DNA of 64,000 bases, from the NCBI RefSeq assembly GCF_030028105.1, contig NC_092380.1, positions 82,581,717 to 82,645,716 on the forward strand, read 5' to 3'. The notes beneath the pieces are model-generated. The model saw only the letters and a list, made by a program, of their open reading frames with translations. It ran no database searches and was not told where the DNA came from. A program made the translations under genes and the position numbers. This document shows, piece after piece, positions 1 through 63,805 of this stretch. Position 1 is the first letter of the stretch. Each line of letters starts with the position of its first letter. This stretch comes from Mobula birostris. Its lineage: Eukaryota.

Positions 1-247
1 TGTTTCTTTTAAAAACACAGTTAATGTTATTGTCAAAGTATTGAGATAATAGTAAGCCATCCAATCATGTATGACATCCAACTAACCAATCATAAATCAC
101 GTACAGCCCTCATTCACTTCCTATCAATATAGCTAAGAGTAGGTGTGATTGAAATTATCCTGGAGTTCTTCATCCACTGTGTTAGTTCAGTCTATACCAG
201 TTGTTAAATATCTCTGCAAAGAAAGTAAATGCAGATACATACATGAG

Positions 248-380
248 AAAATCTGCAGAAGCAGGAAATCCAAGCAACACACACAAAATGCTGGAGGGGC
301 TCAGCAGGCCAGGCAGCATCTATGGAAAAGAGTAAACAGTTGACATTTCGGGCCGAGACCTTTCATCAGGATTGGAGAAA
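248..380. repeat. Short interspersed repeat (acacaaaatgctggaggaactcagcaggccaggcagcatc family); related copies near 1909-2029, 21460-21640, 36500-36560, 44140-44230, 50120-50240, 54400-54470
   Basis: The same ~130 bp motif recurs in both orientations across the window; the family cannot be named with certainty by eye. Confidence 0.8.
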
Positions 381-764
381 AGGAGGAGAAGCACAGATAT
401 ACGTCCTAAAATGATGATTAGTAGTTTGAATTGAAGGCTCAGCCGGCTGTACGTCATATCGTATGCTCATGAGCCCATCTGATGCTGACCTCGGGTGTTG
501 CCTGTCTGGGATCTGAGCTTGCTTCCTGTGACCATGTGGGTTTTCCCCAGCCACTCCAGTCTCCTCTCATATCCTAAAACTCCACTGGTTTATTAACAAT
601 TATAAATCACTCCTAGTCTGGGTGGTGGTAGGAGATTGGATGAGGGGTGGGGAGAGGTAATGGCTATGTGAGAAGAAATAAATTACAGGGAAATAAGAGG
701 GATGATTCCCAAGTGCCGACATGGCTTGATGGGGTGAATAGTCTTCTGCAGTATAAGGAAATAT

Positions 765-1265
765 GGTGTCTCTGTGTCTGACCAACATGTTATTGCATTT
801 GTTACATTGATAGCTAGGAGGGCCATTTTGTTGAAGTCGAAGGATACAACAGCTCCCACTTTGTCACAATGGTTCTCTCAAGTGATGCTATGTCTTAGTT
901 TGGAGAAAATTAGAAGTCGAACCTTTGAATCTATGTTTGATTTTGAGAAAAGATGGAGTTCATTTCGTTATTATCATTTGAGTTAATTGATGGATTCTCC
1001 ACGATCTAACTGTAAGTTTTTTTTGGTGCTTTCTTTTTTACTGGCGGTTTGATGTTTATCTTTAGAAGCTTTATGTATGACGCATGGTCCTGGGGTTGAA
1101 CACCTAATGGGATTTTTCTTTTTTCCCCCACTTTTCTTGCTTAGTAGGGTTTTTTTTTCCCATCACAAAATCTTTTCAATCTTTATATAATGTTTTTTTT
1201 TGCGACATTGTAAGTGTTGTTTACTTCGATGTACTCGTGTTTATTTTGGAAAAAAATAATAAAAA
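765..1265 (+). mobile_element. L1/Tx1-like LINE 3' fragment
   Basis: ORF 774-986 (LSQWFSQVMLCLSLEKIR...FEKRWSSF) parallels the ORF2 C-terminus of the L1 at 27300-27480; it is followed by a T-rich 3' UTR and an A-rich tail. Confidence 0.65.
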
Positions 1266-1519
1266 GATTTGAAAAGAAAGGAAATATGAGACAATATGAA
1301 TGTCTATTTGTCTTCCTCGCAATGTTTATTTCTAAGTTCTATTTCAGATCAATCTTTTCTAAAATTTATTTATGTATTGTCTTCTCAAATATCACCATTC
1401 AACCAGAAACTTCCCAGTTGAAAAGCACAATTTCTTTAATTTGCTTAATCTTTTCTCATAATTTAGACTATTAGCTGAAATAACTAACTTGTAAATGTTT
1501 TCTTTTGTTTGTTCTTTTC

Positions 1520-2070
1520 AAGGATGTTGTTGGGATTGGAGGACCTGAGTTATAAGGAAAGATTAGATAGGTTATGACTTTATTCCTTGGATCATAGAAG
1601 ATTGAGGGGAGATTTGATAGAGATATACAAAATTATGAGGGGTATAGATAGGGTAAATGCAAGCAGGCTTTTTCCACTGAGGTCATGGGTTAAGGGTGAA
1701 AGGTGAAACATTTAAGGGGAACATGAGGGGAAGCTTCTTCACTCAGAGGGTCATGAGAGTGTGGAACGAGCTGCCAGTGCAAGTGGTGCACACGAGCTTA
1801 ATTTCAACATTTAAGAGAAGTTTTGATAGGATGGCAGGGGTATGGTGGTCTATAGTCCGGGTGCAGCTTGATGGGACTGGGCAGCTTAAATGGTTTGGCA
1901 TAGACTAGCAACACACACAAAAAAATGTCGACTGTACCTCTTCCTATAGATGCTGCCTAGCCTAATGCGTTCACCAGCATTTTTTGTGTGTGTTGCTTGA
2001 ATTTCCAGCATCTGCAGATTTCCTCGTGGTGGCATAGACTAGATGGGTCAAGGGGCTGTCTTTGTGTGTT
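1520..2070 (+). mobile_element. CR1-clade LINE 3' fragment, interrupted by an insertion at 1909-2029
   Basis: RGSFFTQRVMRVWNELP is the typical CR1 ORF2 C-terminus; near-identical segments occur at 6100-6430 and 17700-17960. Confidence 0.85.
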
Positions 2071-2119
2071 ACTTTTCTAATACTGTATAATTTATTCTAG
2101 CGATATTGTACCACAGCGT

Positions 2120-2770
2120 GCAATGATGGGAGAGTGGAGAACAGAGACTGCTGGGCATAGCTGGGATCTTTTATTACACTGGCTGCTTTGCAGAGGCCAT
2201 GAGAAGAGTAGACTGAGTTGATGGAGGGGAGGCAGGTTTCTGATGTGCTGATGTCTCTGAAGTCCAGAGAGGATACTTTCTAAGGTGCATCAATAAAAAT
2301 TGGTAAGGTTCAACAGGGACATGCCTCTTGAACAAGTAGAGGTGTTGGTGAGATGCCTTGACTGTGGTGTCAATGTGGTTGGACCAGGTCAGGCGATTGG
2401 TGATGTTCACTCCTGGGATCACGAAACTCTCAGCCTTCCTGATCACAACACCAGTGATGTATACCAGAGCAGGTGCAACAATCCTTTCCTGAAGCCAATG
2501 ACCTGTTCCTTTACTTTGTGGACGTTATTATGTCACTATGTCACTGAGCTCTCTATCTTCTCCCAGTACTCTAACCCATCATTATTTGAGATTCAGCCCA
2601 TTATGCCGGTATCATCTGCAAACTCATAGACAGAGCTAGAGCAGAATCTGGCCTCGCAGTCACGACTGTACAGGAAGTAGATCAGGGGACTGAGTACTCA
2701 GCCTGTGGGGCACCAGTATTGAGAGTGATCGTGGTTAAACATGTTGCTGCCCAACCTTACTGATTGCAGT
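2120..2770 (-). mobile_element. Rex1/Babar-like LINE fragment
   Basis: Minus-strand ORF GVNITNRLTWSNHIDTTVKASHQHLYLFKR resembles the RT C-terminus of the element at 3802-4470. Confidence 0.7.
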
Positions 2771-3589
2771 CTGGTGGTCAGGATTTTGGAATTAAATTGG
2801 ATCTAGTGTCTAAGCAAGTGGAGTTGAAGAGGATGTGAGGGCAATAAAATGGGACCTGTGAAGAATTAGGGTAAATGTGTGTTTGATGATTGGTGCAGAT
2901 TTGTCAGGCTGAAGGGCCTGTTTCTGTACTGTATGTTTCTGTGTTTCCCTGCCAGCACCATCAGTATTTGTAGCATTCCATCCCTCCTGGTCTCCACTCT
3001 GTCACTGACAATCTCTCTGTTTTCTTCACTGTTCCCCTTCTTTTTAATTTAAATCATACTTGTTTTATAATCTACCCTAGATTTGATGAAAAGTATTAAA
3101 TCTGTCCCTCTATTCACTGAAGTTCCAGCATTTGCTGAGTTTTTCTGGCATTTTCTGCTTGTTTTTTTTTGATTGATGATGGGGTAATTATTACCAGATA
3201 AATGTCCTGATTCATGGGGAATGCTGGTCAGTGAGTTATGGTGACAGGCCCAGGCAGTTTGCAGAAATTATAGGTGACTTTACACAGGATTAACAAACGT
3301 CTTACACTCAAACCCTTGCAATTTGACTTGTGGTTTTAGCCTCACCCTCCTTTGAGTTGGATGAGAAGCCCTGGGCTTCCTGTGGATATAGAACACTGCT
3401 CCTATTTTCCACTTTAATGTGTAGGCCCAAAACCTTGAATCCTGCTGAATTTCTTTGTCATGTTATTCACTGTTTCCAGGTCAAGTTCATTGGTAGAACA
3501 AGGCAAACACTGAAAAATGTTCAGAATTAATTAAAGGGAACTGGATCAGCCATGGTCTCTAATGAGCGGGCAGCTGGAGCTTTTCAAGA

Positions 3590-4483
3590 TTCAAGATTCA
3601 AAAAACTTTATTGTCATTCTAACCATACATCAGCTCTGCAGGGCAGAATGAGACAGCATTTCTCAGGGGCAGTGCAATCATAACGTAACAAATGCAACAC
3701 TAAATAATAAACATAACAATAAATAGTAAAACACAACAGCCACATGTCAGTTAAAATCAGTTATAAGTGTCCAGTGCAAGTTAAAAGTGTCCAAAGCAGA
3801 GTCAGGTGGAGCAGCTATTTAGCAGTCTGACTGCCTGTGGGAGGAAGCTGTTTAGTAGCCTTGTGGTTTTAGTTTTGATGCTCCTGTAATGTTTGCCTGA
3901 TGGCAGAAGAACAAACAGTTCAAGGAGAAGGTGTGAGGGGTCTTTAATGATGTAATGTGTCTTCTGGAGGCATTGACTCTGAAAGAGGTCTTGGACAGAA
4001 GGTAGGGAGACCCCAATAACCTTCTCTGCTCTCCTAACCACCCTCTGCAAGGCTTTTTTGTCGACAGCACTGCAGCTGGAGTACCAGGTTGTGATGCAAA
4101 AGGTCAGCACACTCTCAACCACGCCTCTGTAGAATGTAGTTAAGATGTTAGTGGGGAGTGATGCTTGTTTAAGCTTCCTCAGAAAGTGCAATCTCTGCTG
4201 GGCCTGTTTCACAATCCCAGTGGTGTTCCTGGACCAGGTGAGATTGTCTGAGATATGCACCCCAAGGAACTTGATGTTTTCCACTCTCTCCACTGTGGAG
4301 CCGCTGATGCTGAGGGGTGTGTACTCAGGCTGAGACCGTCTGAAATCGACGAACATCTCCTTGGTTTTGGTGACATTAGGCATCAAGTTGTTATCCCTGC
4401 ACCAGCTCTCTAGGTGTTTGACCTCCTCCCTGTACATAGTTTCATCATTTTTGCTGATGAGCCCCACCACTGTGGTATCATCT
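3590..4483 (-). mobile_element. Rex1/Babar-like LINE, 5'-truncated
   Basis: 222-aa ORF with WCRDNNLMPNVTKTKEMFVDFRR...FLGVHISDNLTW...AQQRLHFLRKL, plus a (tcttgaa)n-type tail near 3590. Confidence 0.85.
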
Positions 4484-4899
4484 GATGATCGTTGATTTCA
4501 GACGGTCTCAGCCTGAGCACACACCCCTCAGCATCAGCGGCTCCACAGTGGAGAGAGTGGAAAACATCAAGTTCCTTGGGGTGCAGATCTCGGACAATCT
4601 CACCTGGTCCAGGAACACCACTGGATGGAAAACTTTGACTGCTGGCAAATATCACCAATTTGAGCCTGGAGGCAATTGAGGTATACAAATCCATCAAGTT
4701 GTCATGGTGACAAAACTGCTCTAGCTCTGCCTCTGGCTTGGTGCTTTGGTTGGGCTTGTGAATTAGGAGCAGGAAAAGGCCACTTGGCTCCTCCTACCTT
4801 CCTCTTCTATTCAGTGAGATCCCCGTTTTTGCATGCCCTTTCATTCTCCTTGCCTTAATTAACAAATTTTAATGAGCATATTCTTCCTAAATCACAGAC

Positions 4900-6430
4900 T
4901 CCCCTCTCAATGGACCATAGTCAGGTATATAAAATCCTAAGAGGCATAAATCAGATGAATGATTACAGTCTTTTTGTTTTTCAGGAGAGGGGAGTCTATA
5001 TGTTTAAGGGCACTTTATCTAAATGCCCATAGTATTTGAAACAAGATTAGTGAATTTGTGGCACAGATCAGTACCAAAGCATATGACTTAATGGCCATTA
5101 CAGAAACCCGGCTGTAAGGTAGAGATGACTGGGATCTAAATATCCAAGGGTATCAGGTAATACGGAAAGATAGGCGGGAAGGCAGAGGAGGTGGAGTGGC
5201 GCTCCTGATTAAGGATGAGATCAGGGTGATTGTGAGAGACGATATAAGATCTACGGAGCAGAATGTTGAGTCTATCTGAGTAGAGATTAAGAATAGTAAA
5301 GGGACAAAATCACTGGTGGGAGTTGTCTATCGGCCACCTAATAAAAATATTGCAGTGGCGGAGGAGATTAACTAAGAAATAACGGAGGCTTGTAAGAATG
5401 GAATGGCAGTTGTCATGGGGAATTTTAACTTCCACGTAGATTGGGTGAATCAGATTGGTCAAGGAAGTTGATTTGGAAGAGGGGACTGAGCGTAGCGTAA
5501 CAAAATTTGCTGATGGCACTAAACTGAGTGGAAAAGCAAATTGTACAGAGGATGTGGAGAGTCTGCAGAGGGATAGAGATAGGTTAAGTGAGTGGGCCAA
5601 GGTCTGGCAGATGGAATACACCATTGGTAAATGTGAGATCATGCACTTTGGAAGGAATAATAGAACAGCAAATTATTATTTAAATAGTGAAAGATTGCAG
5701 CATGCTGTTGTGCAGAGGGACTGGGGAGTGCTTGTGCAGGAATTGCAAAAAGTTGGCTTGCAGGTACAACAAGTTATTAAGAAGGCAAACTGAATGTTGG
5801 CCTTCATTGCTAGAGGGATTGAATTCAAAAGCAGGGAGGTCATGCTGTAACTGTACAGGGTACTGGTGAGGCCACGCCTGAAGTATTGTGTGCAGTTCTG
5901 GTCTCCATACTTGAGGACGGATATACTGGCTTTGGAGGCAGTGCAGAGGAGGTTCACCAGGTTGATTCCAGGGATGAAGGGGTTAACCTATGAGGAGAGA
6001 TTGAGTCCCTGGGACTCTCTGGAGTTCAGAAGAATGAGAGGGGATCTTATAGAAACATAGAAAATTTTGAAAGGGATAGATAAGATAGAAGTAGGAAAGT
6101 TGTTTTCATTGGTAGGTGAGACTAGAACTAGGGGACATTGCCTCAAGATTCAGGGGAGAAGATTTAGGACGGAGATGAGGAGAAACTGTTTTTCCCAGTG
6201 AGTGGTGAATCTGTGGAATTCTCTGCCCAGGGAAGCAGTTGAGGCTTCTTCACTAAATATATTTAAGAAACAATTAGATAGGTTTTTACATAGTAAGGGA
6301 ATTAAGGGTTATGGGGGAAAAGGCAGGTAGATGGAGCTGAGCTTACGGACAGATCAGCCATGATCTTATTGAATGGCAGGGCAGGCTCAATGGGCCGGAT
6401 GGCCTACTCCTGCTCCTATATCTTGTGTTC
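4900..6430 (+). mobile_element. Degenerate CR1 LINE with internal deletion
   Basis: Endonuclease remnant (VYRPP, GNFN at about 5320-5430) is joined to KFADGTKL...LQRDRDRLSEWAKVWQM and VQFWSPY...RGDLIET. Confidence 0.9.
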
Positions 6431-8445
6431 TTGTATGTTTAAGGTGGGAGGTAAAGGATTTAAAAGGGACCTGAGAGGCATATTTTTTCACACTGAAGGT
6501 AGTGAGTGTATGGAATGAGCTACCAGAGAAAACAATAGGCACGAGTACAATTACAATGCTTAGGCTATTTAGGAATTTGAGGGATACAGGGCAAATGCAG
6601 GCAAATGGGACTAACTCGGCTGACAGTTTGGTCAACATGGACGGATTGGGCCCAAAGGCCTGTTTTTGTGCTGTGTAACTCTGTGGTGCTATGAACTGAA
6701 CCTTGCTGGTGTTCGCTGATCCTGGGGTTACCTTCTGCAGTTGTCCAGCTCCTAACATCCTGCCGGTTGTGCTGCTGTGGTCTGTCTATGAGTTAGTGTG
6801 AACCACCAGACTGCATGCAGCAAAAAAGGATCTGCTCACAACCTTGATTATCCTCTGAAGGCTCATACTGTGGTGGACTTTTCCACTGTTCCCAAATGTC
6901 TCCGATGATCAGACATATTTGAAAGCAATTTGAAGCATAGTTAAACAATATAAACAAACTCACTTAATGCCAAATTTAACATGCAAATTAAATAGAAATG
7001 TTACTGATAATTAAAATAAAATTAGAAAAATGCACTTACCTGAAATGGATTTGGCTCCATCAGGCAACACTGAATGAAACATACCCGGTCTCAGTTAGGC
7101 ATTATTAAAAACCACTCCTTTACCTCATAGTTGGGCCAGAGGTGAACGTGATCTCCATTATGATCTGTACTTCCATCTGCAGCGCAACCTGATGCATTGT
7201 TCCTCATCATAATTCACGATAGTTCCATGAAAATCGCAGACCTGTTACTGAGAGTTTACCTCCCTGTCCCCCAGTAGCCTGCCCTCACCCTGCATGTTAT
7301 TGCTCAGTCCCAATCCCATGCCAGATTCCACGTGGATGTACACTAATACAGCGCACTGGTTATTGAAATCAAGATAGCACATGGGATGCCATTCCCTGCA
7401 GAAAGTGGCATACCATTGATCAATCGAAGCAACAGTCAGTAGACATCAGTGAGAAACGAGTCAGCAAGCAAATGATGAATGCTGATGGGCCTCTTCCTCC
7501 TGCCAAGCATGCATCCAGCTGAACACACTGTACTTTTAGCAGGAGATTGAACACCAGTTTGGCAGCAGTTGCATGAAAGAGATCTTACAGACTGATTGTC
7601 AACATGATAACTAATTCAATATGCATACTGATAGCAAATTAGACTCAATTTGGCACTTTCTGAGCTCACACAGCAGATGCTGCGTAGCTGGATTTTGGAC
7701 CCACTCTATTGTATATCAACAATTTAATATCTGTGACCATTTCATCTTACTTAAAATATACTTAAGCCACTACTTAAAGCAGATGGTTCATGTAATATGA
7801 TTGCTGTAAGATACCAAGATTTCAAGTTTATAACCATGGAAAGAATGTAGAGGCAGACTTAGGTTAGAAAGAACAGAGGAGAAAGCAATTATTTGTATTA
7901 AATTGCGGATGTCACAATTCAAGAGGAGGAATAGTTATTGTAATTTCTGCCAGAACAGGATAAGTCATGACTGGGAGGAGCAGTGAGCAAAGGACTACTG
8001 TTGATAATGAAATAACAATGGTACCAGAGAAATGGCTGCAAATTACAGAGGGGAAAATGCATGGAGGTACTAGTGTGGAGGTGTACCACTGGCACTTTCT
8101 TGACTGTGCAGTCCCATATTATCTTTCATGAATTTGTATCCTGCATAAGGAAATGGTTAATCCTTCATTAACTTCTGTCTACTTAAGGAGTTTATCTTCA
8201 AAGTCTGGATAAGTCAATTTTCTAATCTGGCACAATTACTTAATTGATCCTCGAACTCTCTTTAAAAGGTCTTTATTGATATCTCAGCTGTTCTTCTATG
8301 GACAATTTCTGAACAACGCATTTGCTGACAGCTGATGTTAGCAGATCAATAGAAGAGCACTGGACTTCCATAAATGTGACAATTTATTTAAAATAAAGCT
8401 TTGTTAATATGCACGAGAGGCCTTTTGTTAATACCAACGTCTAAG

Positions 8446-8508
8446 TGAATAACACAATGAGCTTTAACTTTGAACCATGTGAATCTTCAGACAATTGTGG
8501 TGAAAGAG
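8446..8508 (+). pseudogene. Candidate small upstream exon of the ELF5-like pseudogene
   Basis: AG at 8444-8445 and GT at 8509 bound a 63-nt, phase 1-1, open exon (NNTMSFNFEPCESSDNCGER). It splices in frame to the phase-1 acceptor at 10678. Sequence similarity to ELF5 is weak. Confidence 0.3.
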
Positions 8509-8904
8509 GTAAATTAAACTTCAGAAACTGAAAAGATTTCTCTAGTGATGCCCTCCAGCCAGAAGACTGCAAGATGTGAATTTTTAGCTGCTTATGTTGT
8601 TCTGAGTATAATCTTATGGGCATGTGCAATTATTATAAACAATGTTATTCTTATTTTTTCAAGGTTCAAAGGTTCATTTCATTGTCAATGTATGCATGTC
8701 CAATACCACTCCGATATTTTTGTCTTCTATGGAAAGACCATGGGAGTTGATGAAAGAAGAGACATCAAGTTCCCCCGTCATGGAAAAGAATAAGAAATAA
8801 AGTTTGCGGAACCCAAAATCATACCACCACCCCCCCCCAGGAATAAAAAGCATCAACAGACAATCCCGGACCCCCTTACTCTCAGAAAAAATATTTAATT
8901 TATA

Positions 8905-10170
8905 TGTAGGGTTCTCAGTAATATTAACTGTAATGTTAACTGTTAAGGCTAACAAAATGGCTTCTCTGTAGTGTTGCATGAAATGGTTTCTCTGTAATGT
9001 TAACTGATGAGGTAATGTTTCTCTGTAGCTGCGATGTTTGGGTTAAAGTTACAGATAACAGGGAACTAACAAATGATGACCTGTTATGCTATCTTGTATG
9101 GTGGGAACCGGGAGAAGGAGTTCGCGGGCTTTTCGATGAGGCAAGCAAAGAGAAAGGGAGAGTGCGGGAGCTGCTGGTGTTTCCTGGACAGCGGATACTG
9201 GAATTCGACGGTTCGGATGCTGTCAGAGGTTCGGAGGTCGATTGTGGACTGATCGGGAAGGCGTGAGCTCCAACGAATTATATTTTGTGCACAAGACTGA
9301 TAAACGTACTGAGTGGCGCCTTTGCGTTACTTGTTTCTACTAACCACACCACCTAAAAGAGTTATGAAGTGTAATTATTTAATTGTAAATTATGTACTGT
9401 CTGATATTTTACGTTGTGGGTTTGTACCAGGATGCATTATACAGCATCTACGCAAACGTAGACACAGTTTGGCGGGCAGACGGCAGTTTCCCCTAGATGA
9501 ATGGGAGCTGTGTGTAACATTTGTGGGTGCTCGTCCAGCGATTCAATTCTCTGGATGCTGTGTGATCACTCTGTTTAAAGTACAGTTGTGATGGCGACAG
9601 CTGCGTTTTGGTATGCGGCTGTGGGGGTGCAAGTGAGCAATGCGTGCGTGTTGAGGGGGGTGGAGACTAATATATTAGATGAAGTATTAGTTCAAGGTTT
9701 GAGTATGGTTGAGCTGTTGGCAAAGTGGAAATTGTATCGCGAAACTTTGATTTTGAGACGAGCACAGGCTTAGTGCTAGTGCAGACAAGCGAGGACATAC
9801 AAGGGGCGGGGTTGCCAGAGGTGATTGGCGTCCCAGGGGAGGCGGGACCATGGCGTCTGCAAATTGTTGGGGACGGAGGGGCCGGAGCGGCCGGAGCTCA
9901 GCGAGGAGCTCAGGATGAGGGAGATTTTGGGGTACGAGTTCTCTCGGTACTGAGGGATGAAGGGAAAGAGTGGTCAGATTTGGAAAATTTGGTTAGTTCC
10001 CGTCCCCTAGCGAAAGGCAAGGGTTCCAAGTTGGCATCTGCCATTCCCTCCCTGGCGAGAAAGGCAGAGGAGCCCCACCAGAAGATAAGAATTTTCTCTG
10101 GGATAACACCTAGCCCCGAAGGTGAGGAGGATTATGAGACATGGGTAGAGCAAACGTTGCTGCTCTTTGT
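8905..10170 (+). mobile_element. Gypsy/Ty3 LTR retrotransposon remnant (probable 5' LTR plus truncated PNMA-like gag)
   Basis: TG(8905)...CA(9464)-bounded segment, then a PBS-like tggcgggcag at 9470. Frameshifted gag follows, ending in KIRIFSGITPSPEGEEDYETWVEQ, the PNMA-domain signature (LRIFSG...EE.FE.W.EQ). Confidence 0.7.
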
Positions 10171-10677
10171 TACATATACAAAGTCTAATTAATACCTTTG
10201 GATCACATTATCTTACATAATAACTTAAAAAACCCCTTGTTAACATTGTCACTAAGTCCCAAGTAAGATATGAATCATGCATTTGTTTTAGAATTTTTTG
10301 TTTGCCATTTTGAGGAATATCAGAAATCCCTAGAGCTGATCTGAAAGGTAGGGGATAAGGCTAAGCTGGCTGTCAAGGGACACCTTGGTGAGAGGGGTTG
10401 CTTGAATGTACCACTGTAAGCTGTGCTACTGTAGACCATGCCAGTGGAGCACAGGGCACTTTGTATGTCTTGTGGCTGGATGTGGGGCTGTCATGGGTAG
10501 TGGTTGCAAGTGGTCACCTAAAGTCAGAATGATTTGGCAATTAGTCTTCAGAGCAAAGCACAAATAAACATTTAAGTGTGATCCAACATTGAATTTGTGG
10601 GAAGAATTTTATAATAACTAGAAAATAAAGTATATACTGTAGGTAAGCAAATTTCTTATTTCTGCTTTCTTCTGAAG

Positions 10678-10870
10678 GTTTGCAAAGTGAGTACCTCTAG
10701 GAAATTATTCATGATCTTCTGTCTCCCAAGGAAAGCAGCAGCATTTTGGTATGTGAAGATGGAAAAAAAGGAATATTCCAAGTTGTGAATTCTGATTCTC
10801 TGGCCAAGCCCTGGGGTCAAAGGAAAAAGAATGAGCGCCTGCCCCATGAAAAACTCAGCAGAGCATTGAG
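10678..10870 (+). pseudogene. ELF5: ELF5-like ETS-domain exon with premature stop
   Basis: Acceptor tttcttctgaag|, donor GAG|gtaaca. Translation [64 protein letters not shown] aligns to ELF5 [69 protein letters not shown] at 10698-10700 replaces the invariant Trp. Confidence 0.9.
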
Positions 10871-10885
10871 GTAACATTGTGCATC

Positions 10886-11135
10886 AGAGTACCAGCTACG
10901 TAGGTTCAATTCCTGCTGCTGTTTGTAAGGGGTTTGTACGTTCTCCCCATGACCTCGCGGGTTTTCTCCGGGTGCTCCGGTTTCCTCCCACATTCCAAAG
11001 ACGTTGGTAGGTTAACTTGTCATTATAAATTGTCCCATGATTAGGCTAGGATTAAACTGGGTGATTGCTGGGTGTCGTGGGTCAAAGGGTCTGAAGGGTC
11101 TACTCTGTGTCGTAGATCAATAAAAAAAAATTTAA
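10886..11135 (+). mobile_element. V-SINE/HE1-like SINE
   Basis: Core gggttttctccgggtgctccggtttcctcccacattccaaagac with an A-tail; related copies near 20870-21075, 50870-51070 and 52210-52380. Confidence 0.75.
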
Positions 11136-11138
11136 ATC

Positions 11139-12428
11139 TGACATTGAGATAACATCGAGGTAACATTGTGCATCTGTCATTGAGGTAACAATGTGAATCT
11201 GTCATTGAAGTAACAGTGTGTTTGTCATTGAGGTAACATGCATCTGTCATTGAGGTAACAGTGTGCGTCTGTCATTGAGGTAACAGTGTGCGTCTGTCAT
11301 TGAGGTAATGTTGTGTGTCTGACATTGAGGTAACAGTGTGCACCTGACATTGAGGTAACGTGCGTCTGTTGTTGAGGTAACAGTGTGCATCTCATATTGA
11401 GGTAACAGTGTGCGTCTGTCATTGAGGTAACAGTGTGTGTCTGTCGTTGAGGTAACTGTACGTCTGTCATTGAGGTAACAGTGTGCGTCTGTCATTGAGG
11501 TAATGTGTGTCTGACATTGAGGTAACAGTGTGCACCTGACATTGAGGTAACGTGCGTCTGTTGTTGAGGTAACAGTGTGCATCTCATATTGAGGTAACAG
11601 TGTGCGTCTGACATTGAGGTAACAGTGTGTGTCTGTCGTTGAGGTAACTGTGCGTCTGACATTGAGGTAACAGTGTGTGTCTGTCATTGAGATAACAGTG
11701 TGCATCTCATATTGAGGTACCATTGAGCATCTGTCATTGAGGTAACGTTGTGTTTCTGATATTGAGGTAACATTGTACTTCTGACATTGAGGTAACAGTG
11801 TGCATCTGACATTGAGGTAACAGTGTGCATCTGACATTGAGGTAACAGTGTGCATCTGACATTGAGGTAACTGTGTGTCTGTCACTGAGGTAACATTGTG
11901 CGTCTGACAATGAGGTAACATTGAGTGTCTGACATTGAGATAACAGTGTGCATCTCATATTGAGGTACCATTGAGCATCTGTCATTGAGATAACGTTGTG
12001 TTTCTGACATTGAGGTAACATTGTGCTTCTGTCGTTGAGGTAACAATGTGAATCTGTCATTGAAATAACAGTGTGTCTGTCATTGAGGTAACGTGCATCT
12101 GACATTGAGGTAACAGTGTGCAACTGACATTGAGGTAACGTTGTGCGTCTGTTGTTGAGGTAACTGTGCATCTCATATTGAGGTAACATTGAGCGTCTGT
12201 CGTTGAGGTAACGTGTTTCTGACATTGAGGTAACAGTGTGCGTCTGACATTGACGTAACAGTGTGTGTCTGTCGTTGAGGTAACTGTGCGTCTGACATTG
12301 AGGTAACAGTGTGTGTCTGTCATTGAGGTAACATTGTGCGTCTGTCGTTGAGGTAACAATGTGAATCTGACATTGAAGTAACAGTGCATCTGTCATTGAG
12401 GTAACGTTGTGTGTCTGACATTGAAGTA
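11139..12428. repeat. Minisatellite, ~25-bp unit CATTGAGGTAACAGTGTGCGTCTGT, about 54 units
   Basis: Directly visible tandem array; units hand-counted. The long Cys/Thr-rich minus-strand ORFs here are repeat artefacts. Confidence 0.98.
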
Positions 12429-13039
12429 TGTTAAAAGGAGAGCATTAAGCTTCCCTTAATCTATTCATTGATGTAGTAAAATGTGAACAGAGTCAATTAA
12501 ACATCAGCTATGTTTTTGAGCCAGAAACAACTTACCTCATGAGTAAATATACACAGTAAACAATTATATATGTGTTTGGCATTATGGGAATAGTTTGACT
12601 TCCAGAATAATTCCAGATTGGCATGAAAGTTTCTGTGAATCATGTTGGTAGACACCTGGTATATAATAATGGTGAAAAGATTCTGTGAAATGGTTGCCTG
12701 TGGAAAACAGATGGTGTAGTGTTTGAACAGGGGAATTGAAAGAAAAAAATTCTCAAGTATAGTTAATGATGGGCAGTGGATATGTAAGTAAAAACAACAG
12801 TGCCATAGATGTTGTGCAAACCCATGTTTCATGTGTTAATTGAGTTCTTGCTGCAATTCCTTTGCAGTTATGGAGCACCCAGGAACCTCATATTAATTAA
12901 TGTCAATTAATTAACTTCAGGTTTATGTGTGCTTCATAACTGCAACTGGTAGGTTATCAACGTCAATAACACTTGATTTTCATGTTTAGCAGAGGGATCT
13001 AATTATTCAGAGGTTACTTCATTTTATTTTGCTTTTCAG

Positions 13040-13124
13040 GCATTATTTGAAAACAGGGATTCTGGAATGGGTGGATAAAAGATGAGTGTATAAATTTGGA
13101 AAGAATGCATATAGCTGGAGATAA
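13040..13124 (+). pseudogene. ELF5: ELF5-like terminal coding exon with premature stop
   Basis: Acceptor ttttgcttttcag|g completes the split Arg codon (AG|G). Translation [26 protein letters not shown] matches ELF5 [26 protein letters not shown]. TGA at 13083-13085; natural-position TAA at 13122-13124. Confidence 0.9.
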
Positions 13125-17244: not shown

Positions 17245-17962
17245 GCAGGATACTTGGTAGTGTGGAGGAGCAGAGGGATCTGGGGGTACATGTCCACAAA
17301 TCCCTGAAAGTTGCCTCACAGGTGGATAGGGTAGTTAAGAAAGCTTATGGGGTGTTAGCTTTCATAAGTCGAGGGATAGAGTTTAAGAGTCGCGATGTAA
17401 TGATGCAGCTCTATAAAACTCTGGTTAGACCACACTTGGAGTACTGTGTCCAGTTCTGGTCGCCTTACTAGAGGAAAGATATGGAAGCATTGGAAAGGGT
17501 ACAGAGGAAATTTACCAGAATGCTGCCTGGTTTAGAGAGCATGCATTATGATCAGAGATTAAGGGAGCTAGGGCTTTACTCTTTGGAGAGAAGGAAGATG
17601 AGAGGAGACATGATAGAGGTGTACAAGATAATAAGAGGAATAGATAGAGTGGATAGCCAGTGCCTCTTCCCCAGGGCACCACTGCTCAATACAAGAGGAC
17701 ATGGCTTTAAGGTAAGGGGTGGGAAGTTCAAGGGGGATATTCGAGGAAGGTTTTTTACTCAGAGAGTGGTTGGTGTGTGGAATGAACTGCCTGAGTCAGT
17801 GGTGGAGGCAGATACATTAGTGAAGTTTAAGAGACTACTAGACAGGTATATGGAGGAATTTAAGGTGGGGGCTTATATGGGAGGCAGTGTTTGAGGGTCA
17901 GCACAACATTGTGGGCTGAAGGGCCTGTACTGCGCTGTACTATTCTATGTTCTATGTTCTAT
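17245..17962 (+). mobile_element. CR1 LINE, 5'-truncated
   Basis: EEQRDLGVHVH...YKTLVRPHLEYCVQFWSP...RGRFFTQRVVGVWNELP with a (ttctatg)n tail. Confidence 0.92.
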
Positions 17963-19721
17963 AAACTGGTCCTTGAAGTTTCATTCTTACAGCTCTATGT
18001 AGCTGCATGTATTGTTGGTGATCCTTCCCATTCCCATCAGTTCTGCCCAGGTCTTTAATTACTGAACAGCTGTGTGTTCTAAACATTTTATCAGGAGGAG
18101 TTTTACAGATTCCTTGCCAATCTTTCTTTTTCAGAGGAATGCTAATTTTCTGGCTTGTACATTGAAGTTGCCTTGGAGGATCAGTTTATCTCCCTCTGGG
18201 CCCTAAGATAAGTTCTTTCAAGGCTAGAGTAGGCCTTATTCTTAGCTTCCAGTGTTGGGGCGGATGTGTTGATGACTGTGGCGTGCTGGTTCAGCATCAC
18301 AGTAAGCTGGAGTGTCACTAGACATTGCCTCCCCAGAGGGGAGTCACTGAGCTGCCAGACCAGCTCATTCTTGCAAACTAAACACAGCCCACGAAGGGAA
18401 TGCACCTTTCCCATTCTGCTCTTATAGAGTTTTTTTCTTTGAGCTGGCGATGTTACTGATAATGACTCGTTCAGGGTGATGATGTCAATCTTGCAGCCAT
18501 AACAGAAGAGCGCCATTCAGATTTGTCATTATTGGAAGTGTCCCTTGGGTTCCAGACTTTCAGGTCTGGAACATTATGATAAGGAGTGGAAGTAGCTCAA
18601 GTGCAATTTCTTTCATAGGGGGATTGTCTTGCACCTTAGATATCATACCCAGAGAGGCAAGGGGAGCCAAGATGTCCAGAGATTAAAGATTAAAAGAATT
18701 CAAAATGCATTTATCATCAATGTATATGTGCAGAAAACAACCCTGAGATACATCTTTTCCACAGAGCCACAAAACAAAGACATTAAACCTCCCTGTGTAA
18801 AAAGAAACAAACTGCACAAACAACAAAACATCACCCCCTCCCCTCCCAACACATAAGAAAATGACAAATCACACAAATGCCAACAGGAACATCAACTACC
18901 CCCACGTGCAAAAAAAATCAAATTGTGCAAACGGCAACAAGAACATTAACAACACTCATGTGCAAAAAAGAAACAAATCATGCAAATGGCAACAAGGAAG
19001 TATGTGAGACATCATGGAAAATAAAACACAAAATTGAAAGAGTCCATGTTCATTTTGGCTCAGTGTTTGTTAGTTCGATCCATAAATTGCAAGCCCAGAA
19101 CTCCAGTACCAGCCTCCAGCAGCAACAATGGAAAGAGAGAGAGACCATTTAAACGAAGGGACCTTCGCACAGGAGCAGCGAGAGAGAAAGCGACACATGC
19201 AGACACCTCTCTCCGACAGCAAGAGCAGGAGGCTGGCAGACAGTACTGAACACTCACTTGCCTTGATGCTTCAATCTTCCCTGACACTTTGGATGACAAG
19301 ATCAGTGAGAAATGAAGTTGATCATGGGCTCACACCCCATCTCTAAGCTTCTTGGCCTCGAGGCCACCTGCCTGTCAGAACCTTCTCAGAGACAGAAAAG
19401 TGCCAAATCGCCCAATTGGCTTGAAAACACACCATTAAACTGTAGATCGCAGGCTCCAACAGTACCAGAGCCACATTTAAAAGAAAAAGAAGACATAAAA
19501 GATATGAAAGAAACCATTACATGTACCACCTAGAGAATGTCACCCATGATAGTGTTGTTTGCTGGCGCCATCTTCTTCTGGAATATGGTTTATTCAATAA
19601 ACAAATACATACATGGACACACTTTGTAGGCGTTTGTCAGCACGTAAGCACTTTCTCTATCTCTCTTCTCTTAAACACATACACACACACACACACACAG
19701 TATATTGTGTGTTTATATGCA

Positions 19722-20530: not shown

Positions 20531-22889
20531 TTGATTAGTTTTTGTTATGTAAGAGTTGTCCATTGGTTTTAAATATATACATACACATACACACACACAC
20601 ACACGGCACACAGATTATGCACACCATATATGTGTTTACACACTCAGAAACACAGCACAGTTACCCTTGCCCTATATTTTCTCTTGATTTATATCTCTTT
20701 TTGATCCATCCTACTCTTGATTCTCCCCATTCCTGAATGTATTGTCCTTCAGAGTAATCCTGATCTCTCATCTTTTCCAATCCCTCTCTGTCCTCCTTCC
20801 TCTAACCATATGTCCTGACAGTGTACATGTGTACAGTTGATTGACAATAAACTGAACTCGAATTTGAATTCCAGCATCTGTAGGATCTCTCGTGATGTCT
20901 GTAAGGAGTTTGTATGTTTTCCCTGTGACTGCACGGATTTCCTCTGGGCGATCAGGTTTTCTCACACATTCCAGAGGCATTCGAGTTGGTAGGTCAGTGG
21001 GACACATGCATAACTGGGCAGTGCAGGCTTGTTGGGATGAAAGAGCCTGTTACTGTGCTGTATCGCAAAAATAAAAGCCCCTGCCTCTGATCCCATCCAC
21101 TTACTCTGTTCCCTCTAAGACTCTAACCTGTTCCTTTGCATTTTATTCCATAGATACCTTCCCAACTCTCCCTCCCGTCATTCTCCATCTACTGTTTGCT
21201 CAGCCTATTGCTTAGTGCAGACTCCCCAGCCTTCTCACAGAAGGCTTCAGGAGAAACTGCAGCGCCATCTAGTGCTGCTTGATGTAACTGGTTCCTCAGG
21301 GCTATGGGGGAGGGTATGTGGGTGCTGGCTTGTGATTTCCTATTCACTGGAGATGCAGATATACCTTGTGGGGATGGGAGCATCTCACACAGTCACCATC
21401 TTTCAAAAGATAATTTGATGTGCTCAAATGAATGTTCAAGCTCAGAAGAACACTGTCTGGAGTTTGCAAACTCAAGATATTCTACAGATGCTGGAAATCT
21501 TGAGCCATACATAGAAAATCAACCTGCTGAAGGGCCTTGTCTAGAAATATTGACAGTTTATTTCCCTCCAGAGATGCTGCCTGACCTGCTGAGTTCCTCC
21601 AGCATTTTGAGTATGTGGAGCTTGCACATTTTCCCTCCCACTGCATGAGCTGCCTCCTATTTCTGGCACAGAACTGGACATTAATTGGCTCCTGTACATT
21701 GCACCAGTGTGCAGGGGTGTGGTGGGATTTTGGAGGATGCAGAAATTGATGGGAGTATGGGGACAATAAAATGAGCTAGGGCGGGATTGGTCTGAAAATG
21801 GGTGCTTGCTGGGCAGCAGTAAACCAAAGGGTCTGTTTCCTTGCTGCGTCATTCTATGACTCTGGAGCACCATGGAAAGGCTCTTCTCGGACCACATCTC
21901 ACAGACAGTCTGGAAAAAACCCAAGCACCAGGAGCTGCAGGGTGCAAATAGCATATCGATTGTTCTGAAACCAATTGTAATTGCCATGTGTGATGTGATG
22001 GCATTTCTACCAGAAAACATAGGATTGACAGGAGTGACCAGAAGGCCTATGAGCTAACTAACCACAGCAAAGGGGATTGTTGAATTAGGTTTATGGGCAC
22101 CTGAAAGCAACGATCCTGCAGTACAAGGATTCCAATGAATTGCTAGCTGTCAGGACATTATATTCAAGCCCATGGAGTTGGCAAAGGACAAATACGAGGG
22201 AGCATCATTTTAAGGTGATTGTATGGGTGTTGGGGGGGGGGAAGAGTTCAAGAGATAAGTACTTTTTACACAGAGAGTGGTGGCTTTGTAGAACGCTCTG
22301 CCAGAAGTGGTTGTGGAGGCAAATGCATTAGGGACATTTAAGAATCCCTTAGATAGGTACATGGAAGATAGTAAAATAGAGAGCTATATTGTTGTGTGAA
22401 GAAAGTCACTGGAGAAAAGTACTGATAGATATGAAGCAGCCTCTTCATTCAACAAAACTAGTTACAGCAGGCACCATATTGAGACGCTTTTGGTGGAAAG
22501 GTCTGCCTGGCCCACACTACCTGATATTTTATATCAAAGGACAATTCCATATTTTCAATGCATCCACAATGCTTTCTTTGGAACTACACACAAGCTTTAC
22601 ATGTCCTGATTCACACCCATACCATAGACATCTAAGTAAGCTTTAATCAGCATTGTCTGGTCTGTGATTCAAGGCTTTTTGGAACCTATTGCTCAGCGCT
22701 GCATTTTAAATTAAGTCTACAATCTATACTCAGATTTGAAGATTGATGGCTGAAGTTATTTGCTAGGTGTGCAAACCCAAAAATCGCTCTAACAAGCTAC
22801 TGTATGTTGGAGAGAATGTTTGGATTGACCTTAGAGTGGGGTAAAAGGTTTGGCACAAAATCATAGGTCAAAAGGCCTGTAGAGTACTG

Positions 22890-23900
22890 TAATGCTCTAA
22901 GTTTTACACTCTATGTTCTAAACGCAGTGCCTTGACTGATGAAAACCAGCATGCTAAACACTCTGTCTTCTTGTATAGCTGCTTTCTGTGAACTGTGCAC
23001 TTGTGTTCCCAGGTCCCTCTGTTCCACAGCACGTGTAACTGCCTTGCTTTCCACATTTCTATAGCTCTTTGTTTTGACTGACCAAAGTGCATCACCTCAC
23101 ACTTATTCAAATTGAAATCCATTTGCCATTCCTCAGCTCATTTCCCTAACTAATCGAGATCTTTTCGCTATTCATTGTAACCTGCTTCACCATCAACAAG
23201 TCCTCCTAATTTAGTGTCATCAGCAAACTTGCTTATCATGCTATGTACATTCATATCTAAATGATTTACATACATAATTAATAACAAGGGTACCAACATT
23301 GACCCCTAAGACACTGCACTAGTCACAGGCCTCTGGTTGGAGAATTGACCTTCAGCTATCACCCTCTTCTTCCTATCTTTGAGCCAATTTTGAGTCCATC
23401 TTGTTAGCTCCCCATGAACCTAACTTTCCAGATCAGCCTGCCATGCAAGACTTCATCAAAAGCCTTACTAAAGTGCATGGAGACAAAATCCACTGCTCTA
23501 CCTTCATCTATCCCTGTAGGTACCTTTGAAAAAATAGTCAGACATGACCTCCTATGCACAAAACCATGTTAACTAATTCTGACCAGGCTTTGACTATTCA
23601 AATGATCTTGTCTCTCAGAATCTGCTCCAGTAACTTCTCTATGACTGGTCAGCTCATCAGCTTGTAGATCCCTGACCTGTTAGAGCTATACTTCTTAAAC
23701 AATAAAACAACAGTCTTCTGGAACTTGCCACCAGCCAACAGAGAAGCAATTGTCTCTACATAGGCCTCTGTGATTTCTTACTTGGCCTTCCATAAGTTTG
23801 AGGGGTGCGCTTGTTCAGGCCCTGTAGATTTGCCCACCTTAGTGCACTTCAAATCAACAGATACCTCCTTCCTCATAAGAGGCATATGTTCCAAGACCTC
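22890..23900 (-). mobile_element. Degenerate CR1 LINE
   Basis: Minus-strand MDFNLNKCEVMHFG; RT motif KFADDTKL encoded around 23210-23230. Confidence 0.8.
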
Positions 23901-34200: not shown

Positions 34201-34412
34201 GGCGTTTCAGAAAAATGAATGCAAGGCAGTCTAAGAGCTATGAGTTGGAAGATATTCTGAAGCACCACTGGCTGTATACTTCAAAGTATTTACAGAGGTT
34301 TATGGATGTGAACAATGAATTGCAAAATGAACCAGATCCATTTGTACCAGAAGAATTAATCAGCCAACATGATCCAATAAATTCAATAGATGATGATTCC
34401 CTTTATTTTTAA
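31260..34412 (+). CDS. RAG1: Recombination activating gene 1, 1050 aa, single coding exon
   Basis: CRMC...CHSC zinc region, RING ([24 protein letters not shown]...CPVC), nonamer-binding [21 protein letters not shown], catalytic CDGMGD, GTGYDEK and SEGNESGN. Acceptor tctctattag| at 31246, 13 nt before the ATG. Confidence 0.99.
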
Positions 34413-48895: not shown

Positions 48896-49289
48896 TGCTG
48901 CAGTAGAAAGCTGGCTGGACCTTTGAAAGGAAACTGAATACAAAATCATGTTAGAAATGAAAAGAAAATAAAGACCGCAATAATGCAGAACTGACCATGT
49001 ACAGACATTGCTATTAATCTATCATTTTTACAATAAGCCAATAATCAGTGCAACTTACTTTAAAACTGAATTATTTTGGGTTCATGATTTATTCATGAAA
49101 ACATTTGCAAAATGACCTTTTAACAAATAGTTATTGTATTCCACATTGTTAAATTCACTTTCCATAAATCTTCGTTCTGCCAACTCCATACCTTTTGAAT
49201 TCTAGCTAATGTTTTTTTTCTCTGTTTTAAAGTGTCATTCTTTTATTGAAACATCACTGGGAAGATATACAGATGATTTTTCAATCTCT

Positions 49290-63766: not shown

Positions 63767-63805
<39 letters not shown>

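What the first reader, a model, noticed from the sequence alone, without database searches (positions are those of the whole stretch)
10864..12428. Minisatellite built from the gene's own splice donor: ~54 tandem copies of the exon/intron junction
Seen: the true junction reads CATTGAG|GTAACATTGTGCATC (10864-10885) and the array unit is CATTGAGGTAACA(G/T)TGTG(C/T)(A/G)TCTG(T/A). The 18-mer gaggtaacattgtgcatc is identical at 10868 and 11157. Removing the SINE at 10886-11135 rejoins gtgcatc|tgacattgag, a perfect unit, so the array starts at the junction itself. About 43 of about 54 units keep GAG|GTAA. Inference: the intron carries dozens of competing 5' splice sites and U1-binding decoys within 1.6 kb, most of which would shift frame or add stops. 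The expansion may have caused, or followed, the gene's inactivation. A satellite seeded by a splice site is unusual.
Basis: partly seen in the sequence, partly recalled or inferred. Interest (0 to 1): 0.8.

Follow-up and report, generated by a model that had tools for sequence, protein, structure and literature searches.

The report
Splice-donor minisatellite in a dead ray gene
A ray's defunct ELF5-type gene carries about 54 tandem copies of its own exon/intron junction in its last intron; this is a real and neatly traceable example of an already known kind of repeat and probably has no function.

Summary
A 25-bp minisatellite lies at 11139-12428 (Tandem Repeats Finder: 52.4 copies). One further unit sits at the junction itself, 10864-10885, cut off from the rest by a 253-bp SINE. 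44 copies keep GAGGTAA.

The exon is the first Ets-domain exon of an ELF5 orthologue lying upstream of RAG1 in a myliobatiform ray. The intact orthologues in a sawfish (Pristis) and a shark (Heptranchias) have the same junction, CAYTGAG|GTAACA, once and no array. So the array was born from the junction in the ray lineage. Its right edge is a second ancestral ATTGAGGTA motif, which lies 210 bp downstream in Pristis; the 184 bp in between are missing in the ray. This fits the known models of minisatellite birth from short direct repeats.

The gene is dead in several ways:
- two nonsense codons;
- 23 non-synonymous against 6 synonymous changes on its own branch;
- no 5' exons, because about 9.5 kb present in Pristis is absent.

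Minisatellites whose first unit spans an exon/intron boundary are a described class (human F7, IFI6, CBS, LMNB2, PDGFA). In the examples whose transcripts were analysed, only the most upstream donors are used. Nothing supports the array as the cause of inactivation. The order of events stays open because no closer relatives' DNA could be fetched. This is a new member of a known kind.

The parts
2781..2814 (.). Apparent breakpoint of a roughly 9.5-kb loss that removed the promoter-proximal block and exons 1-3 (start codon, PNT domain, linker) of the ELF5 orthologue
   Evidence: A colinear blastn chain links window 51-2781 to Pristis L002 880-9144, and window 2814-10882 to L002 18652-25608. tblastn with residues 1-150 of the shark and sawfish proteins finds nothing in the window. 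The blocks just left of the breakpoint are only 68-74% identical and may be transposon copies, so this is an inference.
10678..10870 (+). Pseudo-exon: first Ets-domain exon of the ELF5 orthologue. TAG at 10698-10700 replaces the Trp of LWEF, the second conserved Trp is Cys, and one codon is deleted
   Evidence: Pfam Ets E = 5e-12. The closest solved structure is ELF5 at 9e-17. The exon is aligned to shark and sawfish exons of 196 nt.
10864..10885 (+). First array unit: the last 7 nt of the exon (CATTGAG) plus intron +1 to +15, including the authentic donor GAG|GTAACA
   Evidence: It is identical to the Pristis junction through intron position +12.
10871..13039 (+). Last intron, 2169 bp: GT...polypyrimidine tract...CAG. 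It comprises 1305 bp of array, 253 bp of SINE and 611 bp of unique sequence
   Evidence: The unique part is orthologous to the Pristis intron at 84% identity.
10886..11138 (+). 5'-truncated SINE-like insertion that splits unit 1 after its 22nd base. It has a B-box-like GGTTCAATTCC and an A-rich tail
   Evidence: Partial copies lie at window 50930-51005 and 20893-20994 and at Pristis L002 32467-32579 and 19653-19763. ARAGORN finds no tRNA. Removing it restores a perfect unit.
11139..12428 (+). Main body of the 25-bp minisatellite, about 53 units. It contains higher-order blocks: an 8-unit, 192-bp near-duplicate (11298-11492 against 11493-11684), three identical units at 11785-11859, and a 3-unit motif that recurs at 11142, 12008 and 12321
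12419..12428 (+). Terminal partial unit CATTGAAGTA, orthologous to the second ancestral motif AATTGAGGTA of the sawfish intron (L002 25800-25809)
   Evidence: Alignment A2, the blastn block window 12414-12747 = L002 25794-26126.
13040..13124 (+). Pseudo-exon: last Ets-domain exon. TGA at 13083-13085 replaces the Leu of RRLMYKF. TAA at 13122-13124 is the normal batoid stop, shared with Pristis

Best explanation
This is a lineage-specific intronic minisatellite (25 bp, about 54 units). It was born from the single-copy 5' splice junction of the last intron of an ELF5 orthologue that lies upstream of RAG1 in a myliobatiform ray.

Shown:
- Sawfish and shark carry the same junction once, with no array.
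- The array's left edge is the junction.
- Its right edge is a second ancestral ATTGAGGTA motif.
- The 184 bp that separate the two motifs in the sawfish are missing in the ray. They are partly shared with the shark, so they are ancestral.

Inferred: loss of those 184 bp put the two 9-bp motifs 25 bp apart. That made a 1.4-copy direct repeat, which replication slippage or unequal exchange then expanded. Expansion went first unit by unit and later in multi-unit blocks. Methylated-CpG decay produced the CG/CA/TG variants, and a SINE later landed in unit 1.

The host gene is dead: its 5' half is absent, it has two nonsense codons, and it evolves at the neutral rate. So the roughly 45 donor-like copies are most likely inert fossils, and the array is a neutral by-product with no function. 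It probably expanded after the gene lost constraint rather than killing it.
For: The array and its statistics.

Host exon is an Ets domain, closest to ELF5.

Synteny of the ETS gene with RAG1 on the same strand: seen in the shark. In the window RAG1 is at 31260-34412.

Single-copy junction and no tandem repeat in the orthologous intron: shark and sawfish. Junction alignment A1.

Colinear flanks: window 10400-10882 = L002 25115-25608 and window 12414-12747 = L002 25794-26126. Alignment of the last unit to the sawfish second motif.

The missing 184 bp are ancestral, because shark 22422-22918 aligns to L002 25304-25787.

A junction-plus-downstream chimera predicts the unit at 23 of 25 positions, against 21-22 of 25 for a contiguous 25-mer.

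Pseudogene status:
- stops;
- ray branch 23 non-synonymous / 6 synonymous against sawfish branch 5 / 9, Fisher p = 0.008;
- at least 29 of 279 polarised changes on the ray branch, against a neutral intron distance of K = 0.186 for both branches together;
- 5' exons absent;
- no annotated orthologue from Mobula, Hypanus or Hemitrygon among hits listed down to the EHF paralogues.

Variation within units sits at positions 1-2, 13-14, 19-20 (CG 26, CA 21, TG 11) and 25. The other 18 positions differ from the consensus by about 3%.

Precedent: in F7, IFI6, CBS and LMNB2 only the upstream-most donors of such arrays are used, and the source reports a similar situation for PDGFA (PMC1557585).

Birth models from flanking 5-10 bp direct repeats, with an incomplete terminal unit: PMC3389668, citing Haber & Louis 1998 and Taylor & Breden 2000.
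Against: - No species closer than the sawfish could be examined. The order of the 184-bp loss, the array's birth, the stops and the 5' deletion is therefore inferred, not observed.
- Concerted evolution can reset divergence between units, so a young-looking array may have an old origin.
- The chimera model beats the contiguous model by only 1-2 positions out of 25.
- The 5' deletion rests on a colinear chain whose blocks nearest the breakpoint are only 68-74% identical and may be transposon copies.
- Transcription of the remnant was not tested.
- Locus specificity was tested only in this window, two orthologous loci, a metagenome scan and a protein-space search, not in the host genome.
Confidence: 0.75

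Rival explanations
1. The array came first and helped kill the gene. Dozens of donors identical to the authentic one diverted splicing, and every diverted product carries the in-frame TAA and loses the end of the Ets domain. Selection on the coding sequence was then lost.
For: 29 decoys share the full 9-mer of the authentic donor, and that donor is only moderate: U1 duplex -6.6 against -14.0 kcal/mol for the consensus. Any downstream donor includes the TAA at 10872-10874. Intact orthologues lack the array and the only arrayed copy is dead. That correlation rests on one arrayed copy and two array-less orthologues.
Against: Functional human genes tolerate such arrays of 5 to 26 donor copies and use only the first one to three donors (PMC1557585). 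The exons have evolved at about the neutral rate over the whole branch since the sawfish split, while the stable positions of the units differ from the consensus by only about 3%. The loss of the 5' half is a sufficient cause on its own.
Confidence: 0.1
2. The array is a dispersed satellite, or the internal repeat of a mobile element, that happened to land beside the exon.
For: Minisatellites often derive from transposable elements (PMC3389668). A SINE sits inside the array, and the region is rich in transposons.
Against: Both edges of the array fall on ancestral single-copy sequence that is colinear with the sawfish intron. The unit is 21-23 of 25 identical to that sequence. The unit shows no similarity to the SINE. 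It does not occur elsewhere in the 64-kb window or in the two orthologous loci. The translated array has no relative among 5.8 billion protein clusters.
Confidence: 0.03
3. Assembly artefact: the copy number or arrangement of the array is mis-assembled.
For: Tandem arrays are prone to collapse or expansion in assemblies, and no reads could be examined.
Against: The units are heterogeneous, with a reproducible higher-order pattern and unique flanks on both sides. The array falls exactly where 184 bp of ancestral sequence are missing. There are no Ns in the window.
Confidence: 0.04
4. The array has been co-opted. It could be a cluster of U1-binding sites acting on a non-coding transcript upstream of RAG1, or a regulatory or recombination-prone element of the RAG locus.
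For: It lies about 19 kb upstream of RAG1. The donor core TTGAGGTAAC is the best-kept part of the unit, with each position unchanged in at least 48 of 53 units. The array's CpG observed/expected ratio is 0.57, against 0.30 for the window.
Against: Positions outside the donor core (15-18 and 21-24) are kept almost as well. The variable positions are explained by CpG decay and by subfamily structure. Sawfish and shark have no such array. There is no Rfam match and no excess secondary structure, z = +0.96.
Confidence: 0.03

Closest known systems
Human F7 intron 7 minisatellite (37 bp, 5-9 copies)
   Same: The first monomer spans the exon/intron boundary (4 nt of exon plus 33 nt of intron). The authentic donor is therefore followed by identical pseudo-donors in tandem (PMC1557585).
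   Different: F7 is a functional gene with few, polymorphic copies, and only the most upstream site is used. Here there are about 54 diverged 25-bp units with 7 nt of exon. The host is a pseudogene, and a SINE separates unit 1 from the rest.
Human IFI6 (6-16) intron 2 minisatellite
   Same: It is a many-copy array: the authentic donor is followed by 25 pseudo-sites reiterating the junction (PMC1557585 citing Turri et al. 1995).
   Different: The gene is functional, and the two nearest pseudo-sites are used constitutively and add residues. Here any downstream donor brings in a stop, and use of the sites is unknown.
CBS intron 13, LMNB2 and PDGFA intron 4 boundary-spanning minisatellites
   Same: They belong to the same class: the first monomer spans an exon/intron boundary (PMC1557585).
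   Different: CBS has 15-20 repeats, LMNB2 has 10-15 repeats of 100 bp, and PDGFA has 16-18 repeats of 81 bp. All are in functional human genes.
Minisatellite birth models (Haber & Louis 1998; Taylor & Breden 2000)
   Same: The array is bounded by two copies of a 9-bp direct repeat (ATTGAGGTA) that exist as single copies in the sawfish. It also ends in an incomplete unit. Both features are predicted by these models (PMC3389668).
   Different: The ancestral motifs are 210 bp apart, not 25. An extra 184-bp loss is therefore needed, either before or after the first duplication.
ELF5 (ESE-2), epithelium-specific ETS factor
   Same: The two remaining exons encode the Ets domain. The best matches are the ELF5 structure and ELF5 proteins. 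The intron position after SRAL-R is shared with the shark and sawfish orthologues.
   Different: The gene is not intact: it has two nonsense codons, both conserved Trp residues are lost, no PNT or 5' exons are present, and the substitution pattern is neutral.

Membership tests
Minisatellite whose first monomer spans an exon/intron boundary (F7 / IFI6 class) | Head-to-tail array of a 10-100 bp unit | tested here: met
   Period 25, 52.4 copies, score 1364. Units are listed.
Minisatellite whose first monomer spans an exon/intron boundary (F7 / IFI6 class) | The first monomer contains the last exon bases and the authentic 5' splice site | tested here: met
   The unit at 10864-10885 is CATTGAG|GTAACATTGTGCATC. 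The exon end is fixed by the Ets-domain reading frame and by the orthologous exon ends in shark and sawfish.
Minisatellite whose first monomer spans an exon/intron boundary (F7 / IFI6 class) | The donor sequence is reiterated in the intron | tested here: met
   44 copies of GAGGTAA. 30 copies of GAGGTAACA, counting the authentic site.
Minisatellite whose first monomer spans an exon/intron boundary (F7 / IFI6 class) | The host transcript is spliced at the most upstream donor or donors | not testable with these tools
   No RNA data are available. The host is a pseudogene without its 5' exons.
Minisatellite whose first monomer spans an exon/intron boundary (F7 / IFI6 class) | Copy number varies between alleles (VNTR) | not testable with these tools
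   Only one haplotype is in hand.
Minisatellite born from flanking short direct repeats (Haber-Louis / Taylor-Breden) | 5-10 bp direct repeats bound the array and pre-exist as single copies | tested here: met
   ATTGAGGTA occurs at L002 25591 and 25801 in the sawfish. Those two sites correspond to the array's left and right edges.
Minisatellite born from flanking short direct repeats (Haber-Louis / Taylor-Breden) | Incomplete terminal unit | tested here: met
   A 10-nt stub, CATTGAAGTA, lies at 12419-12428.
Minisatellite born from flanking short direct repeats (Haber-Louis / Taylor-Breden) | The ancestral spacing of the direct repeats equals the unit length | tested here: not met
   The spacing is 210 bp in the sawfish against a 25-bp unit. 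An additional 184-bp loss is required.
Unitary pseudogene of ELF5 | Orthologous position (synteny) with an intact gene in relatives | tested here: met
   In the shark the gene lies immediately upstream of RAG1 on the same strand. The window is colinear with the sawfish locus.
Unitary pseudogene of ELF5 | Disabling lesions and relaxed constraint | tested here: met
   TAG at 10698 and TGA at 13083. 23 non-synonymous / 6 synonymous changes on the ray branch against 5 / 9 on the sawfish branch, p = 0.008. The 5' exons are absent.
Unitary pseudogene of ELF5 | No intact copy elsewhere in the same genome | tested here: inconclusive
   No ELF5-type protein from Mobula, Hypanus or Hemitrygon appears among the listed hits. 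The host genome itself could not be searched.

The most novel reading that the evidence does not exclude
The array arose while ELF5 was still active in the ancestor of these rays. Decoy splicing into an immediate stop codon then drove the loss of a conserved epithelial transcription factor. That would be a natural case of a boundary-spanning minisatellite killing its host gene. It would also supply a 54-donor natural substrate for testing how the splicing machinery chooses among identical 5' splice sites.
Probability: 0.08. Interest if true: 0.6.

Novelty: new member of a known kind. Interest (0 to 1): 0.3.

Why it matters
Boundary-spanning minisatellites have served as natural models for 5' splice-site choice. 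The examples cited in the paper read here (PMC1557585) are all human genes with 5 to 26 donor copies. This one has about twice the copies of the largest of them. Its origin can be read directly from outgroups: one junction and one downstream 9-bp motif in the sawfish became the edges of the array in the ray. That gives a clean, datable illustration of how a minisatellite is born from short direct repeats.

It also marks ELF5 as lost in at least one ray lineage, next to the RAG locus.

Because the host gene is dead, the array probably has no consequence for the animal. Its value is as an example, and as a possible substrate for minigene tests.

Tried and rejected
- Closer relatives. I looked up the RAG1 loci of Mobula hypostoma and Hemitrygon akajei and the window's own assembly. 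No DNA was returned because the assembly files are too large. The array is in any case about 19 kb from RAG1, beyond the 10-kb flank limit.
- Array open reading frame. The array's long minus-strand ORF (224 aa) has no relative among 5.8 billion protein clusters. It is an artefact of repetition, not a gene.
- Metagenome scan. An exact 22-mer of the unit had no match in the metagenome contigs.
- RNA families. Rfam gave no match anywhere in the window.
- tRNA head. ARAGORN found no tRNA in the SINE.
- Hairpin-driven slippage. Single-stranded DNA folding of 150 nt of the array is no more stable than shuffles, z = +0.96.
- Regex hunts for the downstream Ets exon failed. tblastn with ELF5 proteins found it.
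- A third premature stop was rejected. TAA at 13122-13124 is the normal stop, shared with the sawfish.
- Selection on the donor core was rejected. Other unit positions are conserved equally well.
- MaxEntScan could not be run because its model files are absent. U1 duplex energies were used as a proxy.
- The IFI6 paper by Turri et al. 1995 is not held in the library. It is cited only through PMC1557585.
Full report
**1. What is there**

Tandem Repeats Finder reports one dominant array in the window. It lies at 11152-12428, with period 25, 52.4 copies, 79% matches, score 1364 and consensus ACATTGAGGTAACAGTGTGCGTCTG. The 24-mer unit with up to three mismatches is found 28 times. All of these are on the + strand between 10864 and 12417, against none expected from shuffles.

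The 18-mer GAGGTAACATTGTGCATC occurs exactly twice, at 10868 and 11157. GAGGTAA occurs 44 times in 10864-12428. The full 9-mer of the authentic donor, GAGGTAACA, occurs 30 times.

Unit-by-unit parsing gives about 54 units. Most are 25 nt, with subfamilies of 23 and 22 nt, and the array ends in a 10-nt stub.

**2. The junction is a real splice junction of an ELF5-type gene**

Region 10701-10871 matches the Pfam Ets domain at positions 6-60 of 81, E = 5e-12. Its best solved relative is ELF5/ESE-2 (9e-17), ahead of ELF3 and EHF. tblastn with ELF5 proteins found the remaining Ets exon at 13040-13124.

The intron is 10871-13039, 2169 bp, with GT at its start and a polypyrimidine tract plus CAG at its end. 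Of this, 1305 bp are array, 253 bp are SINE and 611 bp are unique.

**3. Where the window comes from**

The window holds RAG1 (31260-34412, +) and RAG2 (47336-48949, -). Its RAG1 protein is 98.6% identical to that of Mobula hypostoma and 95.2% identical to those of Hemitrygon and Hypanus. It sits on a 118-Mb contig of assembly GCA_030028105.1. The window therefore comes from a myliobatiform ray close to Mobula.

**4. Orthologues give the ancestral state**

The shark Heptranchias perlo has an intact 259-aa gene with PNT and Ets domains immediately upstream of RAG1 on the same strand (locus L001). The sawfish Pristis pectinata, which is a batoid, has an intact 243-aa orthologue (locus L002). NCBI names both 'ETS homologous factor'. 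Their best non-chondrichthyan matches, however, are ELF5 proteins (about 1e-80), well ahead of EHF proteins (about 1e-53).

Both species have the intron at the same codon position. The junctions read:
- GCACTGAG|GTAACAATGCGCTTCT in the shark;
- GCATTGAG|GTAACATTGTGCGACT in the sawfish.

The sawfish junction is identical to the ray's through intron position +12. Neither intron contains a tandem array. The unit, made of seven exon bases plus the start of the intron, therefore exists as a single copy in the outgroups. The exon part encodes the conserved Ala-Leu-Arg. The array was copied from the junction in the ray lineage, not the other way round.

**5. How it was probably seeded**

The ray and sawfish sequences are colinear on both sides of the array. 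Window 10400-10882 matches L002 25115-25608, and window 12414-12747 matches L002 25794-26126. The sawfish segment in between is absent from the ray. It is partly shared with the shark, so it is ancestral.

Just after that segment the sawfish has ...GTTGCATCTAAAATTGAGGTATATTAAAAGG. This aligns to the ray's last unit plus stub...TGTGTCTGACATTGAAGTATGTTAAAAGG. The ancestral intron therefore carried two ATTGAGGTA motifs 210 bp apart: the donor itself and a donor-like copy.

Joining the sawfish junction through +13 to the TCTAA that precedes the second motif requires a 184-bp loss. This predicts the ray unit at 23 of 25 positions. A contiguous 25-mer taken from the junction predicts 21-22 of 25.

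My inference is that this loss put the two 9-bp motifs 25 bp apart, and that slippage or unequal exchange then expanded the 1.4-copy repeat. The reverse order is not excluded: duplication first, then loss of the 184 bp by exchange between a unit and the downstream motif.

Both features match published birth models: a sequence flanked by 5-10 bp direct repeats, and an incomplete terminal unit (PMC3389668, citing Haber & Louis 1998 and Taylor & Breden 2000).

**6. Later history of the array**

Variation is concentrated at unit positions 1-2, 13-14, 19-20 and 25. Position 19-20 reads CG in 26 units, CA in 21 and TG in 11. That is the signature of methylated-CpG decay. The sawfish has CG there, so the A in the junction unit is derived.

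The remaining 18 positions differ from the consensus by about 3%. The donor core is not kept better than positions 15-18 or 21-24.

Blocks of units have been copied:
- an 8-unit, 192-bp near-duplicate (11298-11492 against 11493-11684);
- three identical units at 11785-11859;
- a three-unit motif that recurs at 11142, 12008 and 12321.

A 5'-truncated SINE has copies elsewhere in the window and in the sawfish locus. It inserted into unit 1 after the array existed.

**7.

There are two premature stops. TAG at 10698-10700 replaces the Trp of LWEF, and TGA at 13083-13085 replaces a Leu. The second conserved Trp is Cys, and one codon is deleted. The TAA at 13122-13124 is the normal batoid stop, shared with the sawfish.

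With the shark as outgroup, the ray branch carries 23 non-synonymous and 6 synonymous changes in 94 codons. The sawfish branch carries 5 and 9 (Fisher p = 0.008). The ray branch has at least 29 changes in 279 nt, or 10%. The neutral intron distance between ray and sawfish is K = 0.186 for both branches together. The exons have therefore drifted at about the neutral rate for roughly the whole time since the split.

The 5' exons are also missing. The colinear chain jumps from L002 9144 to L002 18652 across window 2781-2814. That skips the promoter-proximal block, exon 1, the PNT exon and exon 3. tblastn with the N-terminal 150 residues finds nothing in the window.

No ELF5-type protein from Mobula, Hypanus or Hemitrygon appears in a list that reaches down to the EHF paralogues.

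**8. Do the donors matter?**

The unit donor pairs with U1 over six base pairs (AG|GUAA). The computed duplex energy is -6.6 kcal/mol, against -14.0 for the consensus. It is the same 9-mer that the intact shark and sawfish genes have at their annotated junction, so it is competent in sequence.

Any downstream donor would carry the in-frame TAA at 10872-10874 into the message.

In the known cases only the most upstream one to three donors are used. This is reported for F7, IFI6, CBS and LMNB2, with a similar situation for PDGFA (PMC1557585). Here there is no promoter or first exon within reach. I therefore regard the copies as inert.

Because the stable unit positions are only about 3% diverged while the exons show about 10% neutral drift, the present array looks younger than the loss of constraint. 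Homogenisation between units could hide an older origin, so the order is not settled.

**9. Specificity and artefacts**

The unit is absent from:
- the rest of the window;
- both orthologous loci;
- the metagenome contigs.

Its translation has no relative in protein space. The host genome itself could not be searched and no reads could be examined, so locus specificity and assembly correctness remain to be shown.

There is no Rfam match and no excess secondary structure.

**10. Verdict**

It is not a new kind of thing. It is a large, well-resolved new member of the class of minisatellites whose first monomer spans an exon/intron boundary, and it sits in a unitary ELF5 pseudogene beside the RAG locus of a ray. 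The claim that it caused the gene's death is unsupported and, on balance, unlikely.

Noticed in passing
window 31260-34412 (+) and 47336-48949 (-): The window holds the RAG locus. RAG1 has an intact 1050-aa ORF and RAG2 an intact 537-aa ORF. They are convergently oriented and about 13 kb apart. RAG1 is 98.6% identical to that of Mobula hypostoma.
   Followed up: partly
window 2781-2814; Pristis L002 9145-18651: About 9.5 kb of the sawfish locus has no counterpart in the ray. It holds the promoter-proximal block, exon 1, the PNT exon and exon 3 of the ELF5 orthologue. Only the two Ets-domain exons survive in the ray.
   Followed up: partly
L001 (Heptranchias perlo) and L002 (Pristis pectinata): NCBI names the shark and sawfish proteins 'ETS homologous factor'. 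Their best matches outside cartilaginous fishes are ELF5 (about 1e-80), not EHF (about 1e-53). They look like ELF5 orthologues that have been misnamed.
   Followed up: partly
protein search: Among cartilaginous fishes only Heptranchias, Pristiophorus, Callorhinchus and Pristis gave an ELF5-type protein. None came from skates, stingrays, mantas or galeomorph sharks. ELF5 may have been lost more than once in this group, or it may simply be unannotated.
   Followed up: no
L002 26127-26500: The sawfish intron has about 375 bp that are absent from the ray at window 12747/12750. This is either an insertion in the sawfish or a second small loss in the ray.
   Followed up: no
window 61116-63704 (+); also 60420-61217 (-), 3802-4470 (-), 17481-17894 (+), 5455-5793 (+): There are non-LTR retrotransposon remains. 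One is a long element with reverse-transcriptase and RNase H domains (Pfam E = 5e-32 and 1.5e-9). Several shorter ORFs look like fragments of the same kind but were not confirmed by a domain match. The gap between the ELF5 remnant and RAG1 is about twice as long as in the shark.
   Followed up: partly
window 11247-12396 (-): The array's reverse strand carries open reading frames of 224, 220 and 110 aa. They exist only because the unit lacks stops in those frames. They have no homologues.
   Followed up: yes
window 18864-18996, 43733-43884, 63770-63811: Other small tandem repeats are present: 54 bp x 2.4, 79 bp x 1.9 and (TG)21. None is related to the 25-bp unit.
   Followed up: no
window 11139-12428: The array's CpG observed/expected ratio is 0.57, against 0.30 for the whole window. 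This fits a fairly young or frequently renewed array whose units still carry the ancestral CG.
   Followed up: partly
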